NCBI RefSeq assembly: GCF_000315625.1
Contig: NW_005434660.1
Coordinates: 531,911-595,910 of the forward strand
Direction of reading: 5' to 3'
Origin: Guillardia theta CCMP2712
Taxonomy: Eukaryota; Protista; Cryptophyta
DNA length: 64,000 nt
Both the position numbers and the translations under genes were made by a program. The notes under the pieces were generated by a model that was not told where the DNA came from, searched no databases, and saw nothing but the letters and a program-made list of their open reading frames with translations. This document shows, piece by piece, positions 5,912-33,276 of this stretch; position 1 is the stretch's first letter, and every line of letters starts with the position of its first letter.

Positions 5912-6450
5912 CACACTGCCGGCCGGGCCGGGCGCGGCTTACGGACGGTAGTACAGCTAACTTAACCGTGTCCGATCAGTGTGGGCCCTAGTACAGCTAA
6001 CCGTTGAACCGTGTCAGTCACAGTGTGGCGTGGGCCGGGCCGGGCCGGCCGGGCCCGCGCGCCGCCGTCATCGTCCGACTCAGGCAGCCGCTGATCCCGG
6101 TCCCGGGAATGGGTTTCCGAACTTCAAGTGACTCAGTGAAGTTGACTGTAGCAAGCTCACGGCGGCGGGCCGGCGGCGGCTGGAGTCACGGTCACAGGCC
6201 GCTGGGATCGGACCGTACCGGCCGGGCGGGCCGGGCCCGGCCGGCGGCGCACTGATCCGGCCGCGCGGGCCGGGGCACGGGCCCCGGCGGTCGCAAAACG
6301 TCCGAGCCAGGTTACCGTACTTAACTTTCAGTGCTCGGAGGAGCCAGCCGCTGACAGTGAGTCACTCAGCCCGGCCCGGCCTCGGCTCACCGCTGGACCG
6401 CGCCCGGGCCGGGCCTCGGTCCCCTCGGAGTCCCGAGTCCACTGGCGCAT
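5900..6450. promoter_or_regulatory. CCGG/GGCC-rich intergenic island
   Basis: Very high GC with dense ccgg/ggcc, gagtc/gactc words and ttccgaacttc. No credible coding frame. It ends at the 31-bp element and lies upstream of the gene at 6832. Confidence 0.5.
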
Positions 6451-8435: not shown

Positions 8436-8974
8436 TCACCTCGATTGATTGGACAGCTCCCGATGCGACGCTTGCTCGGAGCTATTCGCAGGCGCCTCAG
8501 TGTCGTCAGAGTCGGCAAGGTACTTGATTTCCGGGTAGACAAACGAGTCCTTGCGGCAAAACTCATCCAGCAAGGAAATCATGCCGGACCTCCAGGCCTT
8601 GGCATCGAACTTCTGCATTTTGGTTTTACACTCCCTTTCAAGGCACTGCGGAGCAGTCAGATGGCCGCGAGACTGCTGGTGAGCGAGCACGAGAGAGCAA
8701 GCACCTTGAAGAAAGCTTGAGAGGTCAGGTTGCCATCGACAATCTCGGACAGCACGTCGAGGATCTCATCTTGGAGCTGCTCATCCCTCGCCACCTCATC
8801 TGCAAGGGCGGGAAGGGCCTCGGCCAGCAGCGCATTCAACGCCTTCCGTTGAACCTCAGATGTGCCTTTTGGGAACGGAGAGGATTGCGACAATGGCAGC
8901 TTTCGTTGCTGCAAGGAGACGACCCGTTCCCATACTTGCCGACGTCGACCTTCAAGGCCAGCTGCGTTGCTCAT
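8436..8974 (-). CDS. Two-exon hypothetical helical protein (weak TAFH/RST-like pattern)
   Basis: ORFs 8657..8974 and 8436..8690 join through an intron gtgctt...ccgcag, giving LLAEALPAL...EILDVLSEIVDGNLTSQAFFK|CLERECK. Confidence 0.55.
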
Positions 8975-9393
8975 GGCTGCAAGCGCGAGAAGCTAACACA
9001 GCAACAATCTCATCTTCTCCTCCTCTCAACCCTCACTACAGCTGCTTTCCCTTCTCCTCTCCTCTCCTCTCCTCTCCTCTCTCAATCTGTTCTCCTCATT
9101 CGCCTCTCTCAAGCGCAAACAAGCCTTCCTGTCGCCGCAGCCATTTCGCCCTCTAGTTACAAGCCTTGTACCCTACCCCGACTGACCGGTCAGTCTTCGA
9201 GATGTACCCCCTCATTAGTAACCTCACCATGTTCACAGCCAACCCCTACCCTATAAATTCATTATGTGCTGCTATCAAAGTCCCCATTCAAACAGTACCC
9301 CAACCCATCCAAGTTCATTACCCCACCTCGTTTCTCTGACCCACCCACCAACACCAAGTCACTCTAGCTAGGGTGGTGAGGGCGACGGCGGGA

Positions 9394-12300
9394 ATGCCAT
9401 GCGGGATCTGCGGAAGTGTCCGCCATGGCGACTGCATGGAGACCAGTGGGAAGAGTAGCAAGAAGAAGGAGAAGACATCGAAGAAGCCCGCCAAGCCTCT
9501 CAAGAAGATTGTGGTTCCCCAAGGATGCTCTCTCGCCGACATGTTGCGGCCTGTGAGGGAAGCGGTTCCCAACGCTACTGTCAGAATCCCAAGGAAGGTA
9601 ATAGACAGCGACTTCACCTGCGCGATCTGCATGAACATCATCAGCGAGACGACGATCATTACGGACTGTCTCCACCGCTTCTGTGCCGACTGCATCACAC
9701 AATGCTTGAGGCACAGCAAGCGAGAATGCCCTTCTTGCCGCACGCCAGTGGCCAGCCAGAGGAAGCTAGTGAGAGACGCGGACTTCGACACGATGATCTG
9801 TAAGATGTACAGAGACGTCTCTGAGCTGCGAGAGATCCAGGACGTCAAGGCGGCTGAATTCGCCTTCAGCGACAATATCAAAGTACTCTCAGAGGACCTC
9901 AAGGAGCGGCTGGAACAGCAGGAGCAGCTTGCAGCGGTGGGGGGCAGGAGCATCGAGGCAGATCCAACCGGTGACAAGAAAGGAAGAGGGAGGAAGAAGG
10001 CCAAGACCTCCCATGGGGACGATGACGGCAGTAGCGAGGACCAGATGCCGAGAATGGCCCCGGCGTTCATGTCGGAGAACGCTCAGCTCCGGCCGTCCTA
10101 CTTTGTGCGGCTGCAGGAGAACGAGTACCCGGGGGAAGCTCCTTCCAACTTCACGGAGCCGCCAGAGTGCGCTTGCTTCTACGTGGAAGGGACAGGAGGA
10201 TGCAAGGCCGACTGCGGGAACCGGAAGCTCCGGGTACAGTGCAACGCGGAGACTTGCCCTTGCGGGGAGAACTGTACCAACATCCTGTTCAGGGCCAACG
10301 TGAAGGGGCAGGTGGTGAAGCCGTTCCAGCGGGCCATCCGACTCGGCGTGTTCAACCACCCCAACAAGGGCTGGGCCCTCAAGACTCTGGAGGACGTGAG
10401 CAAGGGGCGGATGCTGGAGGAAGTCCTGGGAGAGGTGCTGACCCTTGCTGAATGTGCTTCACGGCTGCAAACGCCAAAGAGGAGGGCGGCAGCCAAGACG
10501 TCAGGCTCTCACTTCCTGATCTCCCTTGACAGGGAGCAGGTGGGAGAGGAGATGCTGTACCTAGACCTGACTGAGAAATCCTCGCTCTCGCGGTTCGCGA
10601 ATCATTCCTCTACCCCAAACTGCGAGTTGCAGATCTGGAATGTGTTTGGGGAGAAGCGAGTGGGGCTGTTTGCTCTTAAGGACATCAAGAAGGACTCGGA
10701 GATCACGCTTGACTACGGCGAAACTCACGTCGGAGACAAGGGCATCGAGAACCATTGTGATACACGGGGAAAGCAGCAGAAGGAAATTCCCTTTCGACAG
10801 TACGTGGAGGACGTGGTGGAGCTTGCAAGGCAGCGGGAGTGCAAGTTGGCGACTGATGAAGCTGTGATGGAGGTGCATCAGGAGGAGACTACGACGACTG
10901 CTCATAAGGACGCGAAGGATCTCGGACGAGCTGAGGAGTGCAAGGGCGAAACTGTTTCTGCCGCCGCTGCTGCTGTGGCTGCTGCTGCTGCTGATCAGGA
11001 CAAGTGCACTGCGAGCAAAGACCAGGAGTCTGAGTCCTCACAGCCTGTTGGGCTGCCCCAGCAGGAGAAGAGGGAGGCAGTTCAGAGCCTTGGGGTGAAA
11101 GGTGATGAGGAGAATGAGGCAGGCACAAAGAAGCGAAGATCTCGGTGGGACATGGGGAGGTCAGATGCCAGCAAGGAGAGCAACGAGACAGGAAGCGCCT
11201 TGGAAGTGGGTAAGGAAGAGAAGCCGTCCATGGGTAAGAGTAAGGAAGAGAAGCCGTCCATGGGTTTGCATGATGCTCTGCTCTCGATGAAGATCCCGAC
11301 GTCCTCCAGCACCACTTTTCACCATCCCATGAGTGAGCGCTCGACAAGCAGCTACCACAGGAGGCAGCCCACCAGGGGGCCCAGCAGGGATGAGGTGAGA
11401 GACGATTATCTGATAAGGGACGGGAAGGCCATGTCGCTGGCGGAGATCTTGAAGCACTGGGGGCTGGTCAACGATGACCAGGTCGAAGAGGCCTATGAAT
11501 ACTCGAGGACGCATGACCTGCCCTTGTCTGAGGCCTTTCAGAAGCGCTTCAACACCCCGGTGGAGCTGATTGAACGAGCCTTCCGACGGCGAGACGCCGC
11601 GATACGGCATCTCGACTCGCTGGAGCACCCGATGAGGAGCGGCCGGTCGGAGTCGAAGCCAGGGGGTCATGATGGTGAAGGGAGTGAGGCCCTTAAGGCA
11701 AAACTCGAAGAGATGCAGAGAAAGGTTGAAGCGCTTGAGAGAGAGAAGAAGCAGCAACAACTGCAACAACAACAACTGCAACAACAACAACAGCTGCAAC
11801 AACATGACCAGTATCAGCAATATCAGATGCATCAGCAACAGTACCTCACACAGCAATATCCGTATCCGCAGCATTATCAGCCGCCCCTTCCACCTCCTTC
11901 CCACTTCCCCACCCCCTCCCTCCCTCCTTCGTATCCCCCTGCTTCCCTCCCTCCCCCACAGCATCCTCCTCCTGTATATTCGATGAATGGCGTTCCTTCT
12001 GGAGATACACCCTCTGGCTGGGTAGGAGGCGACACAGTCAGTTCTGCGAGCTACTCCAACTACTACAATGCCTCTGAAGGGGGGCAGGAGGCGCCGTTGC
12101 CTGCTGCTACTCCCTTACCTGCGAATGTAAATACTCCAACCCCAGTGAGTTGTCAGTTGGCCTTCTTTCCTCCCCTTGACTTGTTCGTTGCCGTTGACTT
12201 GGGAGGCAGGATATCTCTTCAAGGCAGCATCAGTCTCTTGCTGAGCAAGGCACCACAGTTTCTGGCGGTATCACTTTACCTCAACTTCCCTCCTTCCCTC

Positions 12301-13181
12301 CTTGTCTCCCTCCCATTGCCCTTTCCCACCTCCGCCCCCACCTCCACCACCTCCACCACCTCTTCAACCCCCTTCCCCCCCCCCTCCTCCTTCTTCCCAT
12401 AGTCGAGATACATGCCGATTTCTCCACTCTCACTCCACGGCACTGAGTTTCTCCTGCAGATCCTCCCCCTGTAGGGCCGGCAAACGCGCAGACTCCTCAG
12501 TCACAGACTGCAGAGGGCACTGCTGCCTCCTCCCAGCTGGCAGCTGCCAACTCTGCTCACTCCTCCATCGACACAACAGACAGAGACCTCAAGGCAAGAA
12601 ACCCGAGCACAGCCAAGGTGAAAAGAGAGGAGGACGCGACCGAGCAAGCAGCTCTCGTTCTCAGACCCTCACGTGTCTTGTGCAGAGGTCTTCTTCCTCT
12701 CGCGGCGATCATGGTGCACGGAAGATGGAGGAGATCAAGACTGTCCTCGGGCCTATTGTTTGCAAGTGGCTGAGCTTCAAGAAGAAGGAGCCAGAGTGCA
12801 CGTTCCTGCTGTACGTCTCCTCTCTTTCTCTCCTTCCTCGCTCTCCGCTTGTTCTCATGTCCTGGCAACCGCAGGGATAAGGATGAGTTCAAGACGATTG
12901 CTCGGCGACTGGTACATGAGCTGCTCCCAGGATCAGGTCACAAGGTGAGACTCTCTCCTCCCCTCTCCCCCTTCCTTCCCTGTCTTGTCTCCCTCTCTTG
13001 TCTACCTGTCTTGTCTCCCTCTCTCTGGGCACTCGTGATGGTGCGATGTCAGCGATCGCTCGGGAGCGACTGCACAGTAGAAGCGCTGGAGCAGCCGAGG
13101 CTTCAGGCTCAGGTCAAGGAGCATGTCGACATCTTCATCAAGCGCCGCCGACAAGCCGCCAAGACTGAACCTGCGTCCTGA
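9394..13181 (+). CDS. RING1/RNF2-type RING + AWS-SET + ULM-like motif + polyQ/Pro region + SRI-like domain chromatin protein (Set2-like architecture)
   Basis: RING: CAICMNIISETTIITDCLHRFCADCITQCLRHSKRECPSCR...DADFDTMICKMY (9619-9810). AWS: CAC...CKADCGNRKLRVQCNAETCPCGENCTN. SET: KGWALKT...RFANHSSTPNC...ITLDY (10342-10716). C-terminal exons: IVCKWLS...DEFKTIARRLVHEL...VKEHVDIFI (SRI-like). Confidence 0.9.
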
Positions 13182-13326
13182 TCCCTAGAATACTCAAGGG
13201 AAGCAGTACCCCTCCCATACTATATCACCCTACCCCCCTTCTCTCTTCTTTGATAGTGAAAGATAATTGAAGGACCCCCTACAAAAATACCCCACCCCCT
13301 CTGTTGGACTCTGATTCGGAGGGAAA

Positions 13327-14212
13327 ATGCGTGCGTGGCGGATTTTGCTGATAGCGATGGTGGCGGCGGTGGCGATGGCGGGAGAGGATCATTTCGTAGA
13401 GGAAGCGACATCTGTGAAGTTCCCTCTGGACATCCCAGGAGAGAAGAGCTCGCTCGTCCTCCTCGGTGCGACCGTCAGGGTCAAGAAAATCCTCTTCGTG
13501 AATGTGCAGGTAACTTGGCCATCCGACATGGCGGCAGAGGAGGATGAGGCCATGGCTTGCAGGTGTATGCTGTCGGTGTCTACACGGAGCCAGGCGTCGT
13601 CGAAGAGCTGAAGGGAAAGGAGCCGAACGACATGTCGGGCAGAGGAGACGCGGCCTCGTGTTGGAAAACTGACACCCGTGCACAGGTACAAGTATCTCAT
13701 GGAGCATCCCGTCCAGTCGTCGCTCAGACTCACGATGGTGAGGAGCGTCACGGGGGATCAGATGGGAGGAGCCCTCAAGGAGGCCGTGCAGCCCCGCCTG
13801 AAGCTCTTCGCCAGGGACGAGGTAGGACGAGCCGGAAGGGAGATGGGGGCTAACTGGTGGGAGCAAGGCCTCGACTGCAGGAGACATGTCAGCCTTCGAG
13901 AAGCAATTTGACATGAGCTCGCTGGCAGCTGGGACTGTCTTGACATTCTCTCGTCTGCAGGCAAGTGAAGGAACACAGGAGGGAGGGAGGGGGCTCGCAT
14001 GACATGCTTGCAGAATGGAAATCTTGTGACTGAGATTGACGGGAAGGACAAAGGAGAGATACAATCAGAGGCCCTCTCAAGATCTCTGTTCAGGTTGCTA
14101 AGAAATGAGATGGAGGAGGAGGATGACGGCTGTTGTTGCTTGCAGCGTGTTTCTCGACAACGATTCAGTTGTGGAACGATCGAAGCTGCTTCAGCGCCTG
14201 CCGGTGTTGTAA
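13327..14212 (+). CDS. Chalcone-isomerase-fold (CHI/FAP-like) protein with signal peptide
   Basis: EEATSVKFP...LVLLGATVRVKKILFVNVQ|VYAVGVY...SLRLTMVRSVTGDQMGGAL...GEIQSEALSRSLF|SVFLD, preceded by a hydrophobic N-terminus. Confidence 0.85.
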
Positions 14213-27565: not shown

Positions 27566-29175
27566 TCACGTATCGGCAACCACCGGCTTGATCATGAGGG
27601 CGCAGCTTGAACTTATTCCGCTCTCCTTGAGCTACAGCAAACTTCATCTCCTTAGCTGCATCGCCAGCAGACTCACCGTCTTTTCTCTTTCCGAGAGCAG
27701 AAGCTTGGGGATAGTCGAGACGAGGACATAATCCAAGTCCGCAAGCTCCTTCAGCTGCTCCTGCAATGAGAGTCAATGAGCTGCGTGAGGAGGAGAAGGT
27801 TTTCGAACCTCTGCGTTGTCAGCCTGCTCTGCCTTCTTGTACCGCTCGACATCCACGTAGTCGAACATCACCCTGCAAGCTTGTCATACTAGGAAGAAGA
27901 GGAGAAAGGCAAACGAGGAGACAAACCCACCCGACTTGATCTTCCAGTGAAAACCTTCTTGTGAGCTGCGACAGATATTAGCACCATAGCATCTATAACC
28001 CACAACAGCTCCAATCATCCCCGGCCAGCCTCTGTTCTTGATCCCTTTCTCCACCGCCTCCTCTGTTCTTCTACACTGTCTCGTGTCTTCTTGTCTCCTA
28101 TTTCTCTCCCTCTTCCTCTTTCCCCACATTTCTCGCTCTCCCTGCCATTCCATTCCCTTTCTCGCCCCCGGCCTTTCTCTACTTCCTCCTGTAGAGAATG
28201 AGTCCAACCTGCTGGCCATCGGGACACCTGAAGCGAAGCTGCACGACACCAGCTCCCTGCTCGGGCTCTGTTGGGAGGCGCGACACTTTCTCCTCAAACG
28301 CTTTCTGTGCCAGGGAGTCAGCTGGGGCAGCCAATTTTCGGCTGTGGCACCTTGCTGGAGTCGAACAGCTTCGCCTTTGCCTCTGCGGCCTCTGCAGTCC
28401 AATGTTAAAAGGAGAAGGGAGGGGAGAGGCAGGAGGCAGGAGGCAGGAGGCAGGAGGCAGGAGGCAGGAGGCAGGAGGCAGCTTCTTTGTCGTCAAGCAA
28501 CACATCACAGTATGCTCACCCTAGCCGCCCTCTCTGCTGCTTCTGCTTCCTCCTTCCTCTTCTTCTGCTCATTCTGCTTCATCTGGAGCATGCTGTGTTA
28601 CCCACGAGCCTCAGCCACAATAGACGAGGATCACCGAGTCCTCCATGAGGGACTTCTGGAACTCCTCCTCCTGCTCCTGCCGTATGCGGTTCCATTCCAT
28701 CCGCTCCTTCTCCGCCGCCTGCTCGGAACTGATCCTCAGGGTCGGCAAGGAAGGAAGCAACTTGCCGTCAGCTCTTTCTCCTTTTCTGGCACCTTGACCA
28801 AGTCCTGCAAGAGTGGGACGTACTCGGAGAAAGGAGCGCCGATGGCAACGTACGCCGCAAGGACCAGGGCTAGAAACCATTCGAGTTGATTTGCATGATC
28901 CGACCTGCTCTCATGTCAAAGGGGGTAAAAGGAAGGAAAGGAGCTCACGGGTTGAGGGATCGGTTGTTCTTGAGACGTGTGATCAACGTGTCCTTCTCTA
29001 CCTCTTCCTCCCCTCCTCGAAGTCGCAGGCTCGTAACGCCAGGGCATCGAGGTCGTTGGTGAAACTTCAAAGGCGCTGCACGAAACTTTGCCACCTCTAC
29101 TTGCAGGCCGACGGTACACGGGAGGGTCGCTAGCAAGCCCGCAATAGCTAAACTCACTTTGCCATGCGCAATCAT
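27566..29175 (-). CDS. UBX-domain protein with signal peptide and LRLRGG-containing presequence
   Basis: Coiled coil RIRQEQEEEFQKSLMED; UBX LPTEPEQGAGVVQLRFRCPDGQQ...RRFSLEDQV..VMFDYVD...LVSTIPK...T|LKESGISSSCALMI; N-terminus MIAHGKVSLAIAGLLATLPCTVG. Confidence 0.8.
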
Positions 29176-29463
29176 CGCCTCTGATCCCCTCGCCTCCTCG
29201 CCTCCAAGATGTTTCTTACGTCTACGCGCAACAGATGTGCTCGAGAGGATGTCCACTTGTCCTCTGCTCCTACTCACCGATGATCTCCTATCTGCCCTCT
29301 TGCATGCACCTTCCTGCTCTCCTCTCGTTCTTGCTCTCCTTCTTCCTCTCCCTCTCCCGCTCCCTCCAGGTGATCGTACGATCACTCCACTATTGCGAGT
29401 TTTTCGGCCTCCGTACCACATCCCCGCACACTCCCCATGGGCATGAGGAGGGAAGAGGTCTAT

Positions 29464-31428
29464 AGCTGAAGGACAGCAACATACATCTACACCCTCACCT
29501 TTACGCTCATGTGACGGACGTGAAGGCAGCACTCCTCCCCGACATGCCCATCGCCGATGCGGACAAGAGGAGGAGGCTGCAGCGGGAGCTCAAGAGCAAG
29601 CAGCGGAGCGAGCAGAAGCTCCTGATGAGCAAGCTCGACCTCATGGTACCCCCATCCTCCCCCGCCATCGAGCCCGCGAACCACCAAAAGCAGCGCCCCG
29701 CCCTCAACCTCCTCCATGACCTCGTCGCCTACTTGCGCTCCTGCGACGAAAGGCAGCGAGCGCAGGAACAAAAGCGAGCGATCTACACCGATATGATGAG
29801 CTGCATGCTGCTGAGTCGACAGGAGAGGATCATTCTCGCTGACATACCCAGCTGGACAATACGGGACGTGAGCGGAGCGGTACATGGCGATTACGAGGGT
29901 TCGTGCTTCGGGGGGAGGCTGGTAAGCTTGCATGGAGAGGGGGGAGGGAGGCGGGGTGAATGAGTCGATCGTAGGTAGGGCAGTGCATGCTCCATCTTGT
30001 GAGCATGCAGGACATGGACGCGCTCAGAGGCATCGCTCGACAGGCTTGGGATGTGACGTGCCCGCCTGAGTTCCAGGTGGACGAGGTTGTGAGCATGCGG
30101 CTGCTGGAGGGAGGGAGGATGAGGATGGAGCGCTTCCGGCTACTAGGGGTGGTGAGGAAGGACGTCTGCATGTCCATCATCTATCCGGAGCCTCTGGGGC
30201 CCGACAGCGCCGAGATCGAGCTGAAGCATTTGGACTTCCGCAGACTGGGAGGGGTCGCGACGTTTGATCAAGAGAGCCCCTCTTCTCCTTTGCTTGCCGA
30301 CCGAGCGATGAAGCTAGTGTCGGGGAGGTTGTTGCTGATGATGATGATGATGCTCGTGTGGAGACACTGAGATGACTTGCTACAGCTCCCATGGGATGAT
30401 GTCGGAATTCGTCGGCAGGATGGGCACTTGCGACACGTCGAGAGGGCTGATGGAGAAGATGGCGGCGAAGTCGAACTCGACGTTTGGTAGAGACATGTGA
30501 TGTGTGAGTGAGAGACGACGATCGCTAACAGTCTTGTTTATTATCTGTCACTGCAGAGGGCATGACGAAGCAGCTGTTTTCAATCGTCACAAGCCACCAC
30601 GAGGGCCATCTTTTGCTTGATTTTGACAGTGAGGCCGCACATTGCCCTGTGAGATTGCTTGGGCATGCACGTTTCCGCCTTCCTCAGGTCTTTGCACTCA
30701 TCGTCTTTGTCGTCATCTTCTTCTCACTCCTCTTCTTCACTTGTGCCGGATGCGCCAGTTCCTGGGAGGCTTCAAGACCCGCTGGATTCAAGTCATGAAG
30801 GCAACCTTTGATGGCTCAGAGATCAAAGAGCTCAGCGGTACGCGTGGAAGCGAGGAGGCGCTGGTCGCTGAGAAGAAAGTTGCAGACAGCAGGCAGCAGG
30901 TGGTCGGGTACGCGCACGGAGACAGGAGGACGATGGGGTGTCATGTGACGTTCCTTTATTTCTGGAGGCAGACAGGGTGAGGGGAGGGAGGTGAAATGAG
31001 GAAAGCAGCTTGACGGTGGTCGGGACAGGATATGCTTTCATACTCGTAACTTCATCATAAATCCTTTGGGGCTGGAACATAGTGGTCAGGTGACAGAACT
31101 AACTTTGTATAGTTTCAGTTGATTTGATTGGAAGTGTTGATACTGACGGACTTTGTTGAGCAGGTGCTGATATTTTGTTACTTGACGATAGCCTGCTGAT
31201 GAGGTTGTGTCTCATTGCCACTCTCTGGGACTATCCTGCCGCCGGTGTCTGCCTGGCATTGGAACCTGAAGGTCTTCTCAAACGCACTAGAGGTCAGTGA
31301 TGTGACTCGGAGTCCGAGTCGCGTTTCAGGCTCAGTGCCGCATATTAGCTTTTGGAGTCCGGGAACTCCTGAGTCACTGACTTGTTGGCAGGAGCCCTAC
31401 AGGTTTTTCTACGCCTTGAAGAGAACGG
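29464..31428. repeat. Right arm of the ~2-kb inverted repeat (partner 16160-18133)
   Basis: Mirrored ORFs: 29511..29963+ vs 17634..18077- and 29987..30370+ vs 17227..17610-. Confidence 0.95.
29544..31300 (+). CDS. bHLH-PAS-like protein, paralog B
   Basis: Same exon structure as paralog A. The last exon is divergent: GADILLLDDSLLMRLCLIATLWDYPAAGVCLALEPEGLLKRTRGQ*. Confidence 0.7.
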
Positions 31429-31519
31429 GAGAAGATGTTGATAGCAGTCTTGTAAGTGAATTTATGCTGAGTTGAGTGATTCGCAGTCTGCACTTCCGGG
31501 TAGTCTTCAACTTGCAAAA

Positions 31520-31845
31520 AGTTCGCCGCCTGGCGGCGGCCCACCGTTGCGCGCTGCGGCAGTGCCGCCACAACTTGCTAATGCCTGGGCTGTTCCCGGC
31601 GAACATCTTCCGAACTTCGGAAGTTCACCGTCAGTGTTCACAGAGTCAAGTTGCCGGGCCCGGGCCGCGGCGGGCCGCCCAGCCGGTCGGCCGGGGAAAG
31701 GGAAAGGAGGTGAGGGGGGGGGGGGGGGTTCACGGTTGCCGGCGTACGGCCGCGCGGTACGGCCCGGCCGGGGCCGGCCGGCCGGGCGGGACCGAGTCGT
31801 CGGCGCCGGGCGTGACCGACGGTTCCGGTCCGGCGGTGGAACGAG
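31520..31845. promoter_or_regulatory. CCGG-rich island
   Basis: Dense ccgg/ggcc, palindrome GAACTTCGGAAGTTC, and ttcacagagtcaagtt shared with 40874. Confidence 0.5.
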
Positions 31846-31940
31846 CTTTACTCAAAGTTAAGTTAAACATCAGTACGAGACTCAAAGTTAAGTTAAAGAT
31901 CAGTACGAGAGTCAAAGTTGAGCTAAAGATCAGTACGAGA
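31846..31940 (+). repeat. Dispersed 31-bp element, copy 2, expanded as 3 tandem 30-bp units
   Basis: ctcaaagttaagttaaa(c/g)atcagtacgaga x2 plus the degenerate gtcaaagttgagctaaagatcagtacgaga. Confidence 0.95.
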
Positions 31941-33276
31941 GTCAGTCAATTGCGTCCTCATGTCGCACTCGTTCTAGCCTGTTGACTGGCTGGAATGCTC
32001 GCGCTCTGCCAGGTCATGTCAGCACCATGGAGATCACGTTACTTCCGACGCATAAATAATCGAAACGGTGTTGTTTCGTATCGCAAACAGTTGCTTTACG
32101 ACGATCATGGAGCATCTTCAGAGTCAGTACTTCATGGGGCGCAACCATTGCATTTTCGTTTGGGGGTACTTTGGTTCTACTTCTGTGCCACAAGGTCGGT
32201 GTAAGACTACGATGTCAGCAGATATTTGGGGTCAGACGCTCATTTCAGACGGAAATGTCTACCCTCCATCAGAACTCGGAGGTTGTCTCCTTGTTATCTA
32301 AAACATATTTTAAAACGAGGGGTCGATTGTGGTAAAGACTTGTCTCGAAAGGGCCGTTGAGGCCAAGGAAACGATAACGACTTGTTTCGGAATTAGCATT
32401 CAATCACTTCGCATCGCTTCGTTTCCTAAACTGCATCTTTTGAGTTTTACGTCTTGTGAAACAACTTCGACCCCCATCAAGGCATAACGCAACCCAACCC
32501 ACCTCCCACCCCTTGCGGGTCCTCAAAACAACCCACCCCTGAATTTGAGAGGTCAGAACCACCCACCCCTGATTCTTACAGCAGATTCCCCGCTCTTCAT
32601 CCCTACCCCTTCCCTCTCGGCCCCCCTTTTTCATAGGTGTAAACCACCTAGAAGGTCACACATTGAATCGGGGGGTCAAAGTAGCTGAATGAGGGGGTGA
32701 TGGGGTGGTTCTGTGACGCAACCATGGGAGGTGCTTTGGATCGTGACTCGGGTATTTAACTGTAGCAGGGTAGTCAGCAAAGGTACCACAGGGTCATTAG
32801 AGTGCATTAGGGGGTGGGGGTGGACTCCGCTTCTGACCCTGCTGATGTATCCGTGAAGGGGGTTAAAGCACCTCTACCGCTGCAACCCCACTACCCCACC
32901 CTACCTCTCCAGGTAGTTGAATCCGACATTGATTGCAGGCTCAGATTTCTTGCTCAGTGTATAGCCTACTACGTTGTCTGTCAATTTATTAAGTATGCCC
33001 ATAATTGAAAATGGTCATCCCATTTGCTTCCAGCCAGTTGGTTTCCGCCTGGATAACCTGAAAGGAGAGGACCCCACCCCTTTAGGGTAGTTTTACTCCC
33101 CCAGGCCTTTTCTTTCCTCCTCCCAACCTCCCCTTCGCAATTTCCTCCTCCTCTTGTTGGTAGCCACGCTCGCAGCACTTCCCCTCCCGCCCCGCAGCTC
33201 ATCCTGAGACAAACGATTCTGAGGGCGCTCTCCCTCTCTCCCCCTTATCCTCCTCTTCCTCCCTCAACAGTCCAAC

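What the first reader, a model, noticed from the sequence alone, without database searches (positions are those of the whole stretch)
9394..13181. Polycomb RING1-type E3 domain fused to a Set2-like AWS-SET...SRI protein
Seen: the RING (9619-9810) and AWS-SET (10165-10716) lie in one uninterrupted ORF, so the fusion is not a gene-model artefact. The RING carries the RING1A/B signature (CLHRFC.DCI...LR....ECP.CR....S.R.L..D..FD..I.K.Y). The C-terminal exons resemble the SRI domain. Known: RING1 is the catalytic PRC1 subunit that ubiquitylates H2A and normally has a C-terminal RAWUL domain, which is not seen here. Set2/SETD2 writes H3K36me and binds phosphorylated Pol II CTD through SRI; these marks are usually antagonistic. 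Inference: a possibly undescribed chromatin enzyme that brings H2A ubiquitylation to elongating Pol II. I do not know of this architecture being described but cannot search.
Basis: partly seen in the sequence, partly recalled or inferred. Interest (0 to 1): 0.85.

Follow-up and report, generated by a model that had tools for sequence, protein, structure and literature searches.

The report
Cryptophyte RING1-like ligase fused to SET-SRI
A real, expressed gene of the alga Guillardia theta joins a Polycomb RING1-type ubiquitin-ligase domain to an altered Set2/NSD-type histone methyltransferase domain and a probable RNA-polymerase-II-binding SRI tail, a combination I found only in cryptophytes and nowhere described.

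Summary
A spliced transcript contig joins six exons (9394-13181, five GT..AG introns) into one 1096-aa reading frame. It carries a RING1B-like RING, an AWS-SET of the NSD/ASH1L/SETD2 class, a conserved helical module and a C-terminal SRI-like domain.

- **Distribution:** the RING+SET architecture recurs in Hanusia phi and in several marine environmental relatives. I found it nowhere else among 1.84 billion protein representatives.
- **Public annotation:** two short NCBI proteins, one RING-only and one SET-only, lie on this contig, which hides the fusion.
- **Not the cell's RING1:** a canonical RING1 with RAWUL (contig C108) and a PCGF (C91) exist separately, so this RING is a divergent paralogue.
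- **Derived SET:** the post-SET zinc cluster is lost and several otherwise invariant residues are changed (G328A, Y344V, Y374F, A392L, F439L). Methyltransferase activity is therefore uncertain.
- **SRI:** probable but below Pfam's threshold (20.1 bits against a cut-off of 23.5).

My best reading is a Pol II-tethered chromatin writer whose E3 module probably pairs with PCGF. No function has been tested. The scan also noted the post-SET loss separately on this window (s1-435641).

The parts
9394..12144 (+). Exon 1 (917 codons, no intron). It encodes the N-terminal basic stretch, RING, AWS-SET, linkers, the helical module and the Q/P-rich region.
   Evidence: ORF. Spliced contigs X1 and X2 end this exon at 12144 with a GT donor. 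An X2 contig reaches 9396.
9526..9840 (+). RING1-type N-terminal arm plus C3HC4 RING (aa 45-149; zinc core aa 76-115 = 9619-9738).
   Evidence: PDB phmmer: RING1B 83 bits against PCGF1 41 bits. Pfam zf-C3HC4_2. 73-75% identical to relatives P0001 and P0002. RING+RAWUL proteins P0044 and P0082 match here at 102 and 97 bits.
9829..9948 (+). Post-RING helix (aa 146-185), aligned to the matching RING1B region.
   Evidence: The alignment to RING1B runs to query residue 178. About 80% identical in relatives. Helical in the AF2 model.
10165..10284 (+). AWS (pre-SET) cysteine cluster, aa 258-297.
   Evidence: Pfam AWS 28.4 bits. All AWS cysteines are conserved.
10369..10719 (+). Derived SET domain (aa 326-442). 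It keeps R400, F401, N403, H404, E436 and Y441. It changes G328A, Y344V, Y374F, A392L, C406S and F439L.
   Evidence: Pfam SET 59.2 bits. PDB best matches NSD1, NSD3 and ASH1L. AF2 pLDDT about 90, Foldseek NSD1/SETD2/ASH1L E 1e-15. Column analysis against 43 homologues.
10720..10848 (+). Conserved segment that replaces the post-SET (aa 443-485). It has no CxCx4C zinc motif.
   Evidence: 55% identical to relatives. The G. theta paralogues on C8 and C35 keep canonical post-SET motifs.
11419..11628 (+). Conserved helical module of unknown function (aa 676-745; invariant AM..EIL..WG motif).
   Evidence: Alignment A2. AF2 pLDDT 77, four helices. No significant structural match. No Pfam hit.
12210..12267 (+). 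Exon 2 (low-complexity linker).
   Evidence: Joints 12144>12210 and 12266/7>12459/60 in X1 and X2. Frame check.
12460..12617 (+). Exon 3 (low-complexity linker).
12686..12810 (+). Exon 4: start of the SRI-like domain (helix 1, EIKTVLGPIVCKWLS...).
   Evidence: Helix 1 is conserved in Hanusia phi P0181.
12875..12944 (+). Exon 5: SRI-like helix 2 (DKDEFKTIARRLVHELL).
   Evidence: Pfam SRI fragment 15.5 bits. A near-identical exon lies in relative L002 at 6200-6340.
13053..13181 (+). Exon 6: SRI-like helix 3, basic tail and the TGA stop at 13179-13181.
   Evidence: Transcript contigs run on to 13226 and 13243.

Best explanation
This is a genuine, expressed gene of Guillardia theta CCMP2712. It is conserved in other cryptophytes and encodes a 1096-aa nuclear protein made of four constrained modules:
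- a RING1-family RING with its N-terminal arm and post-RING helix, a divergent paralogue of the canonical RING1;
- an AWS-SET of the H3K36-methyltransferase clade that has lost its post-SET zinc site and has a remodelled lysine channel;
- a lineage-specific helical module;
- an SRI-like three-helix tail.

Shown: the architecture, the splicing, expression, domain-specific conservation, and the separate existence of canonical RING1-RAWUL and PCGF genes.

Inferred mechanism: the SRI tail docks the protein on the phosphorylated CTD of elongating RNA polymerase II. The RING, probably as a heterodimer with the cell's PCGF, recruits an E2 and mono-ubiquitylates nucleosomal H2A on transcribed chromatin. 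In effect RAWUL-based Polycomb targeting is swapped for transcription-coupled targeting.

The SET domain could act in one of two ways. It may methylate H3K36 with altered product specificity: the Y344V and F439L changes sit at positions equivalent to EZH2 Y641 and the DIM-5 F/Y switch, where smaller residues favour higher methylation states. Alternatively it may serve mainly as a nucleosome or H3-tail docking module.
For: Organism:
- GUITHDRAFT_65244 lies on a contig of 1,194,225 bp, the length of C8.
- PCGF peptides on C91 are identical to GUITHE002902.

One transcript: a spliced contig links all six exons in two studies, and the CDS is in frame.

RING:
- RING1B 83 bits over 134 residues against PCGF 41 bits.
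- The nearest RING-only proteins carry RAWUL and hit this gene at 102 and 97 bits.
- Conserved relative to RING1B: all eight zinc ligands, the I53, P88 and R91 equivalents that I recall as E2-contact residues, and, in G. theta and Hanusia, the R98 equivalent.

SET: NSD1/SETD2/ASH1L fold. NH, Y441 and E436 are retained.

SRI.

Conservation: RING 73-75%, post-RING helix 80% and SET 70% identical, against 15-30% in linkers. The SRI helix-2 exon is nearly identical in relative L002.

A possible partner exists: PCGF with RING and RAWUL on C91.

Basic NLS-like stretches can be read directly in the sequence.
Against: - No biochemical or localisation data exist.
- The SET has lost residues that are 98-100% invariant in relatives (G328, Y344, Y374, A392, C406) and the whole post-SET zinc cluster, so it may be inactive.
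- The SRI scores below Pfam's gathering threshold.
- In the P0001/P0002 clade the R98-equivalent position reads H, with R one position earlier. RING1B-like acidic-patch docking is therefore not assured.
- A canonical RING1 exists, so PCGF already has its usual partner.
- Only 3 reads lay on the gene in the raw RNA run X19, of which about 6% was read.
Confidence: 0.45

Rival explanations
1. The protein is essentially a Set2-paralogue methyltransferase, or a methyl-lysine or nucleosome-binding pseudo-enzyme, that travels with Pol II. In this reading the RING1-like domain is not an H2A ligase. It serves as a structural zinc module, a nucleosome acidic-patch anchor that makes up for the lost post-SET, or an auto-regulatory or degradation element.
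For: - SET plus SRI is the classical Set2 logic.
- The SET domain is the best-modelled and a strongly conserved part.
- RING1B alone is a weak E3 without PCGF (established knowledge).
- The cell has a canonical RING1 to serve PCGF.
Against: - E2-contact residues and all zinc ligands of the RING are conserved.
- The RING1-specific arm and helix are the most conserved parts of the protein. This argues for a RING1-like partner or E2 function.
- The SET pocket is the more degenerate of the two catalytic sites.
Confidence: 0.22
2. The RING is an active E3, but its substrate is the transcription machinery (Rpb1 or elongation factors) rather than H2A. SRI places the ligase on the CTD, and the degenerate SET binds the nucleosome ahead of or behind the polymerase.
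For: - The SRI-like tail predicts proximity to the Pol II CTD.
- The R98-equivalent nucleosome anchor is not strictly conserved in position across the clade.
- RAWUL-mediated Polycomb partners are absent.
Against: - The RING is specifically RING1-like over 134 residues, including regions used for PCGF pairing.
- As far as I recall, no RING1-family member is known to target Pol II.
Confidence: 0.13
3. The fusion is an artefact: an assembly chimera, a read-through of two genes, or a decaying pseudogene.
For: Two short NCBI proteins lie on this contig, one covering only the RING (P0180, 117 aa) and one only the SET (P0007, 230 aa).
Against: - RING and SET share one stop-free 3-kb ORF.
- Spliced transcript contigs from two studies span RING to SRI.
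- Hanusia phi has a 1047-aa orthologue with the same order.
- Independent metagenome and Logan contigs carry RING+AWS+SET in one ORF.
- Conservation is domain-specific.
Confidence: 0.02

Closest known systems
RING1A/RING1B (RNF2), the catalytic subunit of PRC1
   Same: - C3HC4 RING with the CLHRFCADCI core.
- The N-terminal arm and post-RING helix align over 134 residues.
- The I53, P88, R91 and (in G. theta) R98 equivalents are kept.
- A PCGF partner gene exists in the same genome.
   Different: - No RAWUL domain.
- It is a divergent paralogue, about 40% identical, on a 1.1 substitutions/site stem.
- It sits beside a canonical RING1-RAWUL gene on C108.
- The C-terminal two thirds are AWS-SET, a helical module and SRI instead.
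Set2/SETD2 (with its clade mates NSD1-3 and ASH1L)
   Same: - AWS-SET fold.
- NHS..PNC and ..DY motifs.
- A C-terminal SRI-like three-helix domain at the very end of a long disordered region, as in Set2.
   Different: - The post-SET CxCx4C and its SET-domain cysteine partner are lost.
- G328A, Y344V, Y374F, A392L and F439L.
- No WW domain.
- An N-terminal RING.
- Subfamily placement is unresolved, with a stem of 1.65 substitutions/site.
- The G. theta paralogues on C8 and C35 keep canonical motifs.
EZH2 Y641 lymphoma mutants and the DIM-5 F281 'F/Y switch' (established knowledge, used as an analogy for the altered pocket)
   Same: - Y344 lies in the E-Y-x-G-E motif, the position of EZH2 Y641.
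- F439 lies in the (F)-D-Y motif, the position of the F/Y switch.
- Both are replaced by smaller aliphatic residues.
   Different: - Those cases are point changes in otherwise intact enzymes.
- Here they come with loss of the post-SET and with G328A in the SAM loop, so activity cannot be assumed.
RECQL5: the SRI domain used outside Set2
   Same: It shows that an SRI can tether a different enzymatic activity to elongating Pol II.
   Different: It is a helicase rather than a chromatin writer, and is unrelated in the rest of the protein.

Membership tests
RING1 (PRC1 catalytic RING) family | C3HC4 RING whose closest relatives are RING1A/B rather than PCGF or other RINGs | tested here: met
   - RING1B 83 bits (E 1.8e-22) against PCGF1 41 bits and BARD1 38 bits.
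- The nearest RING-only database proteins carry RAWUL.
- In the tree it sits with RING1-type sequences, with PCGF distant.
RING1 (PRC1 catalytic RING) family | RING1-specific N-terminal arm and post-RING helix | tested here: met
   The alignment to RING1B spans query residues 45-178. These regions are 73-80% identical among cryptophyte relatives.
RING1 (PRC1 catalytic RING) family | C-terminal RAWUL ubiquitin-like domain | tested here: not met
   No RAWUL at E<=1 in exon 1 or the downstream ORFs, nor in Hanusia P0181.
RING1 (PRC1 catalytic RING) family | Being the genome's RING1 orthologue | tested here: not met
   - A canonical RING1 lies at G000:C108, about 151.9-153.4 kb.
- Its exons are 60-76% identical to Geminigera RING1, against 41% for this gene.
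- Its RAWUL is collinear with the GEMCRY032109 RAWUL.
RING1 (PRC1 catalytic RING) family | Arginine anchor (RING1B R98) for the nucleosome acidic patch | tested here: inconclusive
   R is present at this position in G. theta and Hanusia. In P0001 and P0002 the loop is one residue shorter and reads TRHQL.
RING1 (PRC1 catalytic RING) family | Heterodimer with PCGF and H2A K119-type mono-ubiquitylation | not testable with these tools
   - A PCGF gene exists on C91.
- Its RING is split over small exons, so it could not be passed to the complex predictor by reference.
Set2/SETD2 (KMT3) family | AWS plus SET domain of the H3K36-methyltransferase clade | tested here: met
   Pfam AWS 28.4 bits and SET 59.2 bits. 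PDB best matches are NSD1, NSD3, ASH1L and SETD2. Foldseek E 1e-15.
Set2/SETD2 (KMT3) family | Post-SET zinc cluster (C of NHSC plus CxCx4C) | tested here: not met
   - NHSS in G. theta, NHSG and NHSP in P0001 and P0002, and NHSP in Hanusia.
- The post-SET cysteines are absent.
- The paralogues on C8 and C35 keep them.
Set2/SETD2 (KMT3) family | Invariant SAM-pocket and lysine-channel residues | tested here: not met
   - Kept: R400, F401, N403, H404, E436 and Y441.
- Changed: G328A, Y344V, Y374F, A392L and F439L. The usual residue is found at these positions in 91-100% of the 43 homologues.
Set2/SETD2 (KMT3) family | C-terminal SRI (Set2-Rpb1 interacting) domain | tested here: inconclusive
   - Pfam SRI 20.1 bits, E 8e-4, covering profile positions 9-73 of 78, below the cut-off of 23.5.
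- phmmer hits the Pfam-verified SRI domains of P0068 and P0035.
- Own profile: 22.4 bits against at most 9.0 for shuffles.
Set2/SETD2 (KMT3) family | Phylogenetic placement inside the SRI-bearing Set2 clade | tested here: inconclusive
   - In the quick ML tree of 137 SET domains the RING-SET clade has 100% support but sits on a 1.65 substitutions/site stem.
- It joins G. theta C35 only weakly (support 73), which may be long-branch attraction.

The most novel reading that the evidence does not exclude
Cryptophytes run a transcription-coupled H2A ubiquitylation pathway. A RING1 paralogue, freed from RAWUL and Polycomb targeting, rides elongating Pol II through an SRI domain. It ubiquitylates H2A in gene bodies, together with PCGF. 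Its rebuilt SET domain reads or completes H3K36 methylation on the same nucleosome face. That would be a natural single-polypeptide link between marks usually regarded as antagonistic.
Probability: 0.2. Interest if true: 0.85.

Novelty: new variant of a known kind. Interest (0 to 1): 0.62.

Why it matters
PRC1-type H2A ubiquitylation and Set2-type H3K36 methylation are textbook opposites: one marks repressed chromatin, the other transcribed chromatin. A conserved natural protein that joins a RING1-family ligase to an H3K36-clade SET domain and a Pol II-binding tail poses a direct question. Can RING1-type ligases work co-transcriptionally, outside Polycomb targeting?

It also offers a compact system for testing how the two activities interact on one nucleosome, because H2A K119 and H3K36 lie near each other at the DNA entry/exit side.

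There is a practical lesson for surveys of chromatin evolution:
- Two short public protein records on this contig cover the RING and the SET separately.
- The canonical G. theta RING1 has a RING split into tiny exons, and it is absent from the RING1 profile alignments of a recent Polycomb survey.
- Surveys based on annotated proteins can therefore miss both genes.

Tried and rejected
1. 'This gene is the only RING1 of the genome.'
   - I first inferred this from own-genome searches with this RING and with two RING+RAWUL proteins.
   - I rejected it after a search with the Geminigera RING1 sequence from de Potter et al. 2023 found a canonical RING1 on C108. Its RING is split into at least five small exons.
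2. The Pfam SRI matches on C159 and C18 are false. Both lie in C2-domain proteins.
3. A second SRI at the 3' end of the canonical AWS-SET gene on C8. A hand-spliced candidate scores 10.9 bits against a shuffle maximum of 9.0, which is inconclusive.
4. Synteny with the condensin Cnd1 gene that flanks the Tara relative. tblastn found no match in the first 20 kb of the window.
5. The conserved module at aa 676-745 as a UBA/CUE ubiquitin binder. The AF2 model is a four-helix unit with only weak resemblance to bacterial MshEN/GSPII-B domains (Foldseek E >= 0.4), so this has no support.
6. The SET and RING trees do not resolve the origin of either domain.
7. The search for homologous proteins with the RING alone returned only cryptophyte-type fragments and no named RING1.
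8. The ESM Atlas has no RING+SET cluster among its large clusters.
9. Complex prediction was not run. The PCGF and canonical RING1 sequences are spliced from small exons, so they could not be supplied unaltered by reference.
10. The spliced SRI tail found no SRI structure by sequence in the PDB. The only matches were chance hits to uL23 at E about 0.5.

Full report
**What is there**

The window is eukaryotic, intron-bearing DNA of about 53% GC. ORF 9373-12402 (+) is stop-free.

- Pfam finds a C3HC4 RING (aa 76-115), AWS (269-297) and SET (326-442) in it. There is no RAWUL.
- The first 199 residues align to human RING1B/RNF2 over 134 positions (E 1.8e-22, 83 bits). That alignment includes the N-terminal arm and the post-RING helix. 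The best PCGF chain scores 41 bits.
- The AWS-SET region is closest to NSD1, NSD3 and ASH1L (E 1e-26) and to SETD2 (1e-21).
- An AlphaFold2 model of aa 40-489 has pLDDT of about 90 over the SET domain. Foldseek matches it to NSD1, NSD2, SETD2 and ASH1L at E 1e-15.

**Gene model and expression**

Logan contigs of public runs were laid on 8900-13500.

- One 3268-nt contig (run X1) covers 9462-12144, 12210-12266, 12459-12615, 12684-12810, 12875-12942 and 13051-13226.
- Contigs of run X2, from another study, show the same five GT..AG joints.
- Joined with canonical splice sites, the CDS is in frame: 1096 aa, from the ATG at 9394 to the TGA at 13179-13181.
- RING, SET and the C-terminal exons therefore lie on one mRNA.
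- Raw RNA reads (X19) are sparse. Three reads were laid from about 6% of the run, so expression there seems low.

**The C-terminal domain**

- On genomic ORFs only exon 5 gave a Pfam SRI fragment (15.5 bits).
- The spliced tail gives SRI as the only Pfam family: E 8e-4, 20.1 bits, profile positions 9-73 of 78. This is below the curated cut-off of 23.5.
Pfam places the SRI domains of these AWS-SET-WW-SRI proteins at exactly those positions.
- A profile built from six such SRI domains scores the isolated tail at 22.4 bits, against at most 9.0 for 2000 shuffled controls (compare).
- I call it SRI-like: probable but not proven.

**Organism**

- The assembly has 87,145,349 bp in 669 contigs.
- P0147 is 100% identical to the C8 SET exons. 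It is GUITHDRAFT_65244 of Guillardia theta CCMP2712, on a contig of 1,194,225 bp, the length of C8.
- PCGF peptides on C91 are identical to GUITHE002902 in de Potter et al. 2023 (PMC10638273, supplementary files 32 and 34).

**Distribution**

- A word-indexed search of 5.8 billion clusters found only two RING+AWS+SET proteins at 65% identity. P0001 comes from a marine metagenome contig and P0002 from a Logan contig.
- An exhaustive HMMER search of 1.84 billion representatives found only fragments at 60-70% identity with this combination. All other hits were either SET-only or RING-only.
- Cluster look-up added a 1047-aa Hanusia phi protein (EukProt), 71.5% identical overall, with the same domain order. 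It also added further metagenome members of 853-913 aa.
- The ESM Atlas holds no RING+SET cluster among its large clusters.
- Two short NCBI proteins lie on a contig of the same length as C14 (1,021,266 bp). P0180 (117 aa) covers only the RING and P0007 (230 aa) only the SET. This would explain why the architecture is invisible in public domain databases.
- De Potter et al. 2023 and the Grau-Bové et al. chromatin-evolution preprint do not mention the fusion. Other literature searches found nothing.

**Selection**

Against P0001 and P0002, identity varies by region:

| Region | Identity |
|---|---|
| RING arm and RING | 73-75% |
| Post-RING helix | about 80% |
| AWS-SET | about 70% |
| Segment after SET | 55% |
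| Linkers | 15-30% |

The SRI helix-2 exon is almost identical in the relative's locus. All modules are therefore constrained.

**Is it the cell's RING1? No.**

- Own-genome searches with this RING and with two RING+RAWUL proteins at first suggested it was the only RING1-like gene.
- The RING1 profile alignment of de Potter et al. contains a canonical RING1 from the cryptophyte Geminigera (GEMCRY032109).
- Searching G. theta with that sequence found three exon-sized matches at 60-76% identity on C108. This gene matched at only 41%.
- Reading the C108 locus gives a RING split over at least five small exons. It also gives a RAWUL collinear with the Geminigera one. Pfam's RAWUL model does not reach E 0.1 on that exon alone.
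- A PCGF with a split RING and a RAWUL (35.9 bits) lies on C91.
- G. theta therefore has a canonical PRC1 core, and the RING-SET gene is an additional, divergent RING1-type paralogue.
- In a RING tree the cryptophyte RING-SET sequences form a clade (91/100) on a 1.1 substitutions/site stem. That clade sits in an unresolved polytomy with RING1-type sequences, and PCGF is far away.

**How normal is the SET domain?**

- Compared with 43 AWS-SET relatives, the AWS cysteines are kept, as are R400, F401, N403, H404, E436 and the catalytic-motif Y441.
- These residues differ: G328A (GWG loop), Y344V (E-Y-x-G-E), Y374F, A392L, C406S/G/P, F439L/V and the whole post-SET CxCx4C. The usual residue at each position is found in 91-100% of the relatives.
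- The changes are shared by the cryptophyte relatives.
- The two other G. theta AWS-SET genes (C8, C35) keep NHSC/NHCC and canonical post-SET motifs.
- In a tree of 137 SET domains the RING-SET clade sits on a 1.65 substitutions/site stem with no resolved sister.
- From established knowledge, Y344 corresponds to EZH2 Y641 and F439 to the F/Y-switch position. Smaller residues there widen the lysine channel and favour higher methylation states. With G328A and the post-SET loss, inactivity is equally possible.
- The scan's separate note s1-435641 reached the same post-SET observation.

**Interpretation**

Shown:
- a real, spliced, expressed and conserved gene with this architecture;
- it is restricted, as far as these searches reach, to cryptophyte-type sequences.

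Inferred:
- nuclear localisation, from basic NLS-like stretches;
- tethering to the Pol II CTD through the SRI;
- E3 activity of the RING, probably with PCGF. All eight zinc ligands are present. So are the I53, P88 and R91 equivalents of RING1B, which I recall as its E2-contact residues;
- H2A as the substrate, by analogy with RING1B.

The R98-type anchor is present in G. theta and Hanusia but shifted in the other clade.

Rivals are a SET-centred reading in which the RING is structural, an E3 aimed at the transcription machinery, and an artefact. The artefact reading is refuted.

The long intron-free exon 1 contrasts with the highly split canonical RING1, PCGF and paralogous SET genes. It hints at a retrocopy-mediated origin of the fusion, but I did not test this.

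**Verdict**

Two corrections apply:
- This is an extra RING1 paralogue beside a canonical PRC1 core.
- Its SET domain is strongly derived.

I rate it a new domain architecture built from known families, and of real interest to specialists in chromatin evolution.

Noticed in passing
G000:C108, about 151,900-153,400 (+) (L041/L045): This is a canonical RING1 gene of G. theta. Its RING is split into at least five small exons, and its RAWUL is collinear with that of Geminigera GEMCRY032109. No GUITHE sequence appears in the RING1 profile alignments of de Potter et al. 2023, so the gene may be missing or broken in the public annotation.
   Followed up: partly
G000:C91, about 181,100-182,300 (-) (L021 4100-5300): PCGF orthologue with a split RING and a RAWUL (Pfam 35.9 bits). 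Its peptides are identical to GUITHE002902 in the published PCGF alignments. It is the candidate partner for the fusion's RING.
   Followed up: partly
G000:C35, about 28,400-31,995 (-) (L038 5873-8995 and downstream exons): Another AWS-SET gene with canonical NHCC and post-SET motifs. The same 1041-aa exon carries an N-terminal ubiquitin-family domain (PF00240, E 8e-14), an unusual ubiquitin-like plus AWS-SET arrangement.
   Followed up: no
window 9526-10760, against public proteins P0180 (117 aa) and P0007 (230 aa): Two short NCBI proteins on a contig of the same length as C14 cover the RING only and the SET only. No public G. theta record with the whole architecture turned up in the searches.
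   Followed up: yes
window 11419-11628: Conserved four-helix module (invariant AM..EIL..WG motif) between SET and SRI. It has no Pfam hit and no significant structural match, so its function is unknown.
   Followed up: yes
G000:C8, about 934,780-935,240 (-) (L037 2787-3236): The canonical AWS-SET-postSET gene GUITHDRAFT_65244 may end in a degenerate SRI-like tail (FRTG..FILQL / NIEFKAITRKLIENLL). A hand-spliced candidate scores only 10.9 bits.
   Followed up: partly
G000:C16:322110-322205 (+) and G000:C23:120724-120810 (-): Two EZH-type preSET_CXC matches lie above Pfam's cut-off. The C23 match is about 1 kb from a weak SET match. E(z)-like genes therefore seem to be present in G. theta.
   Followed up: no
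P0181 (Hanusia phi) residues about 1005-1047: The transcriptome-derived orthologue reads through the intron that follows the SRI helix-1 exon, at the same junction as window 12810/12811. Its predicted C-terminus is therefore intron-derived.
   Followed up: partly
window 9394-12144 compared with C108, C91, C8 and C35: RING, AWS and SET of the fusion lie in one 2.75-kb intron-free exon. The canonical RING1, PCGF and paralogous SET genes are cut into many small exons. This is compatible with a retrocopy origin of the fused part.
   Followed up: no
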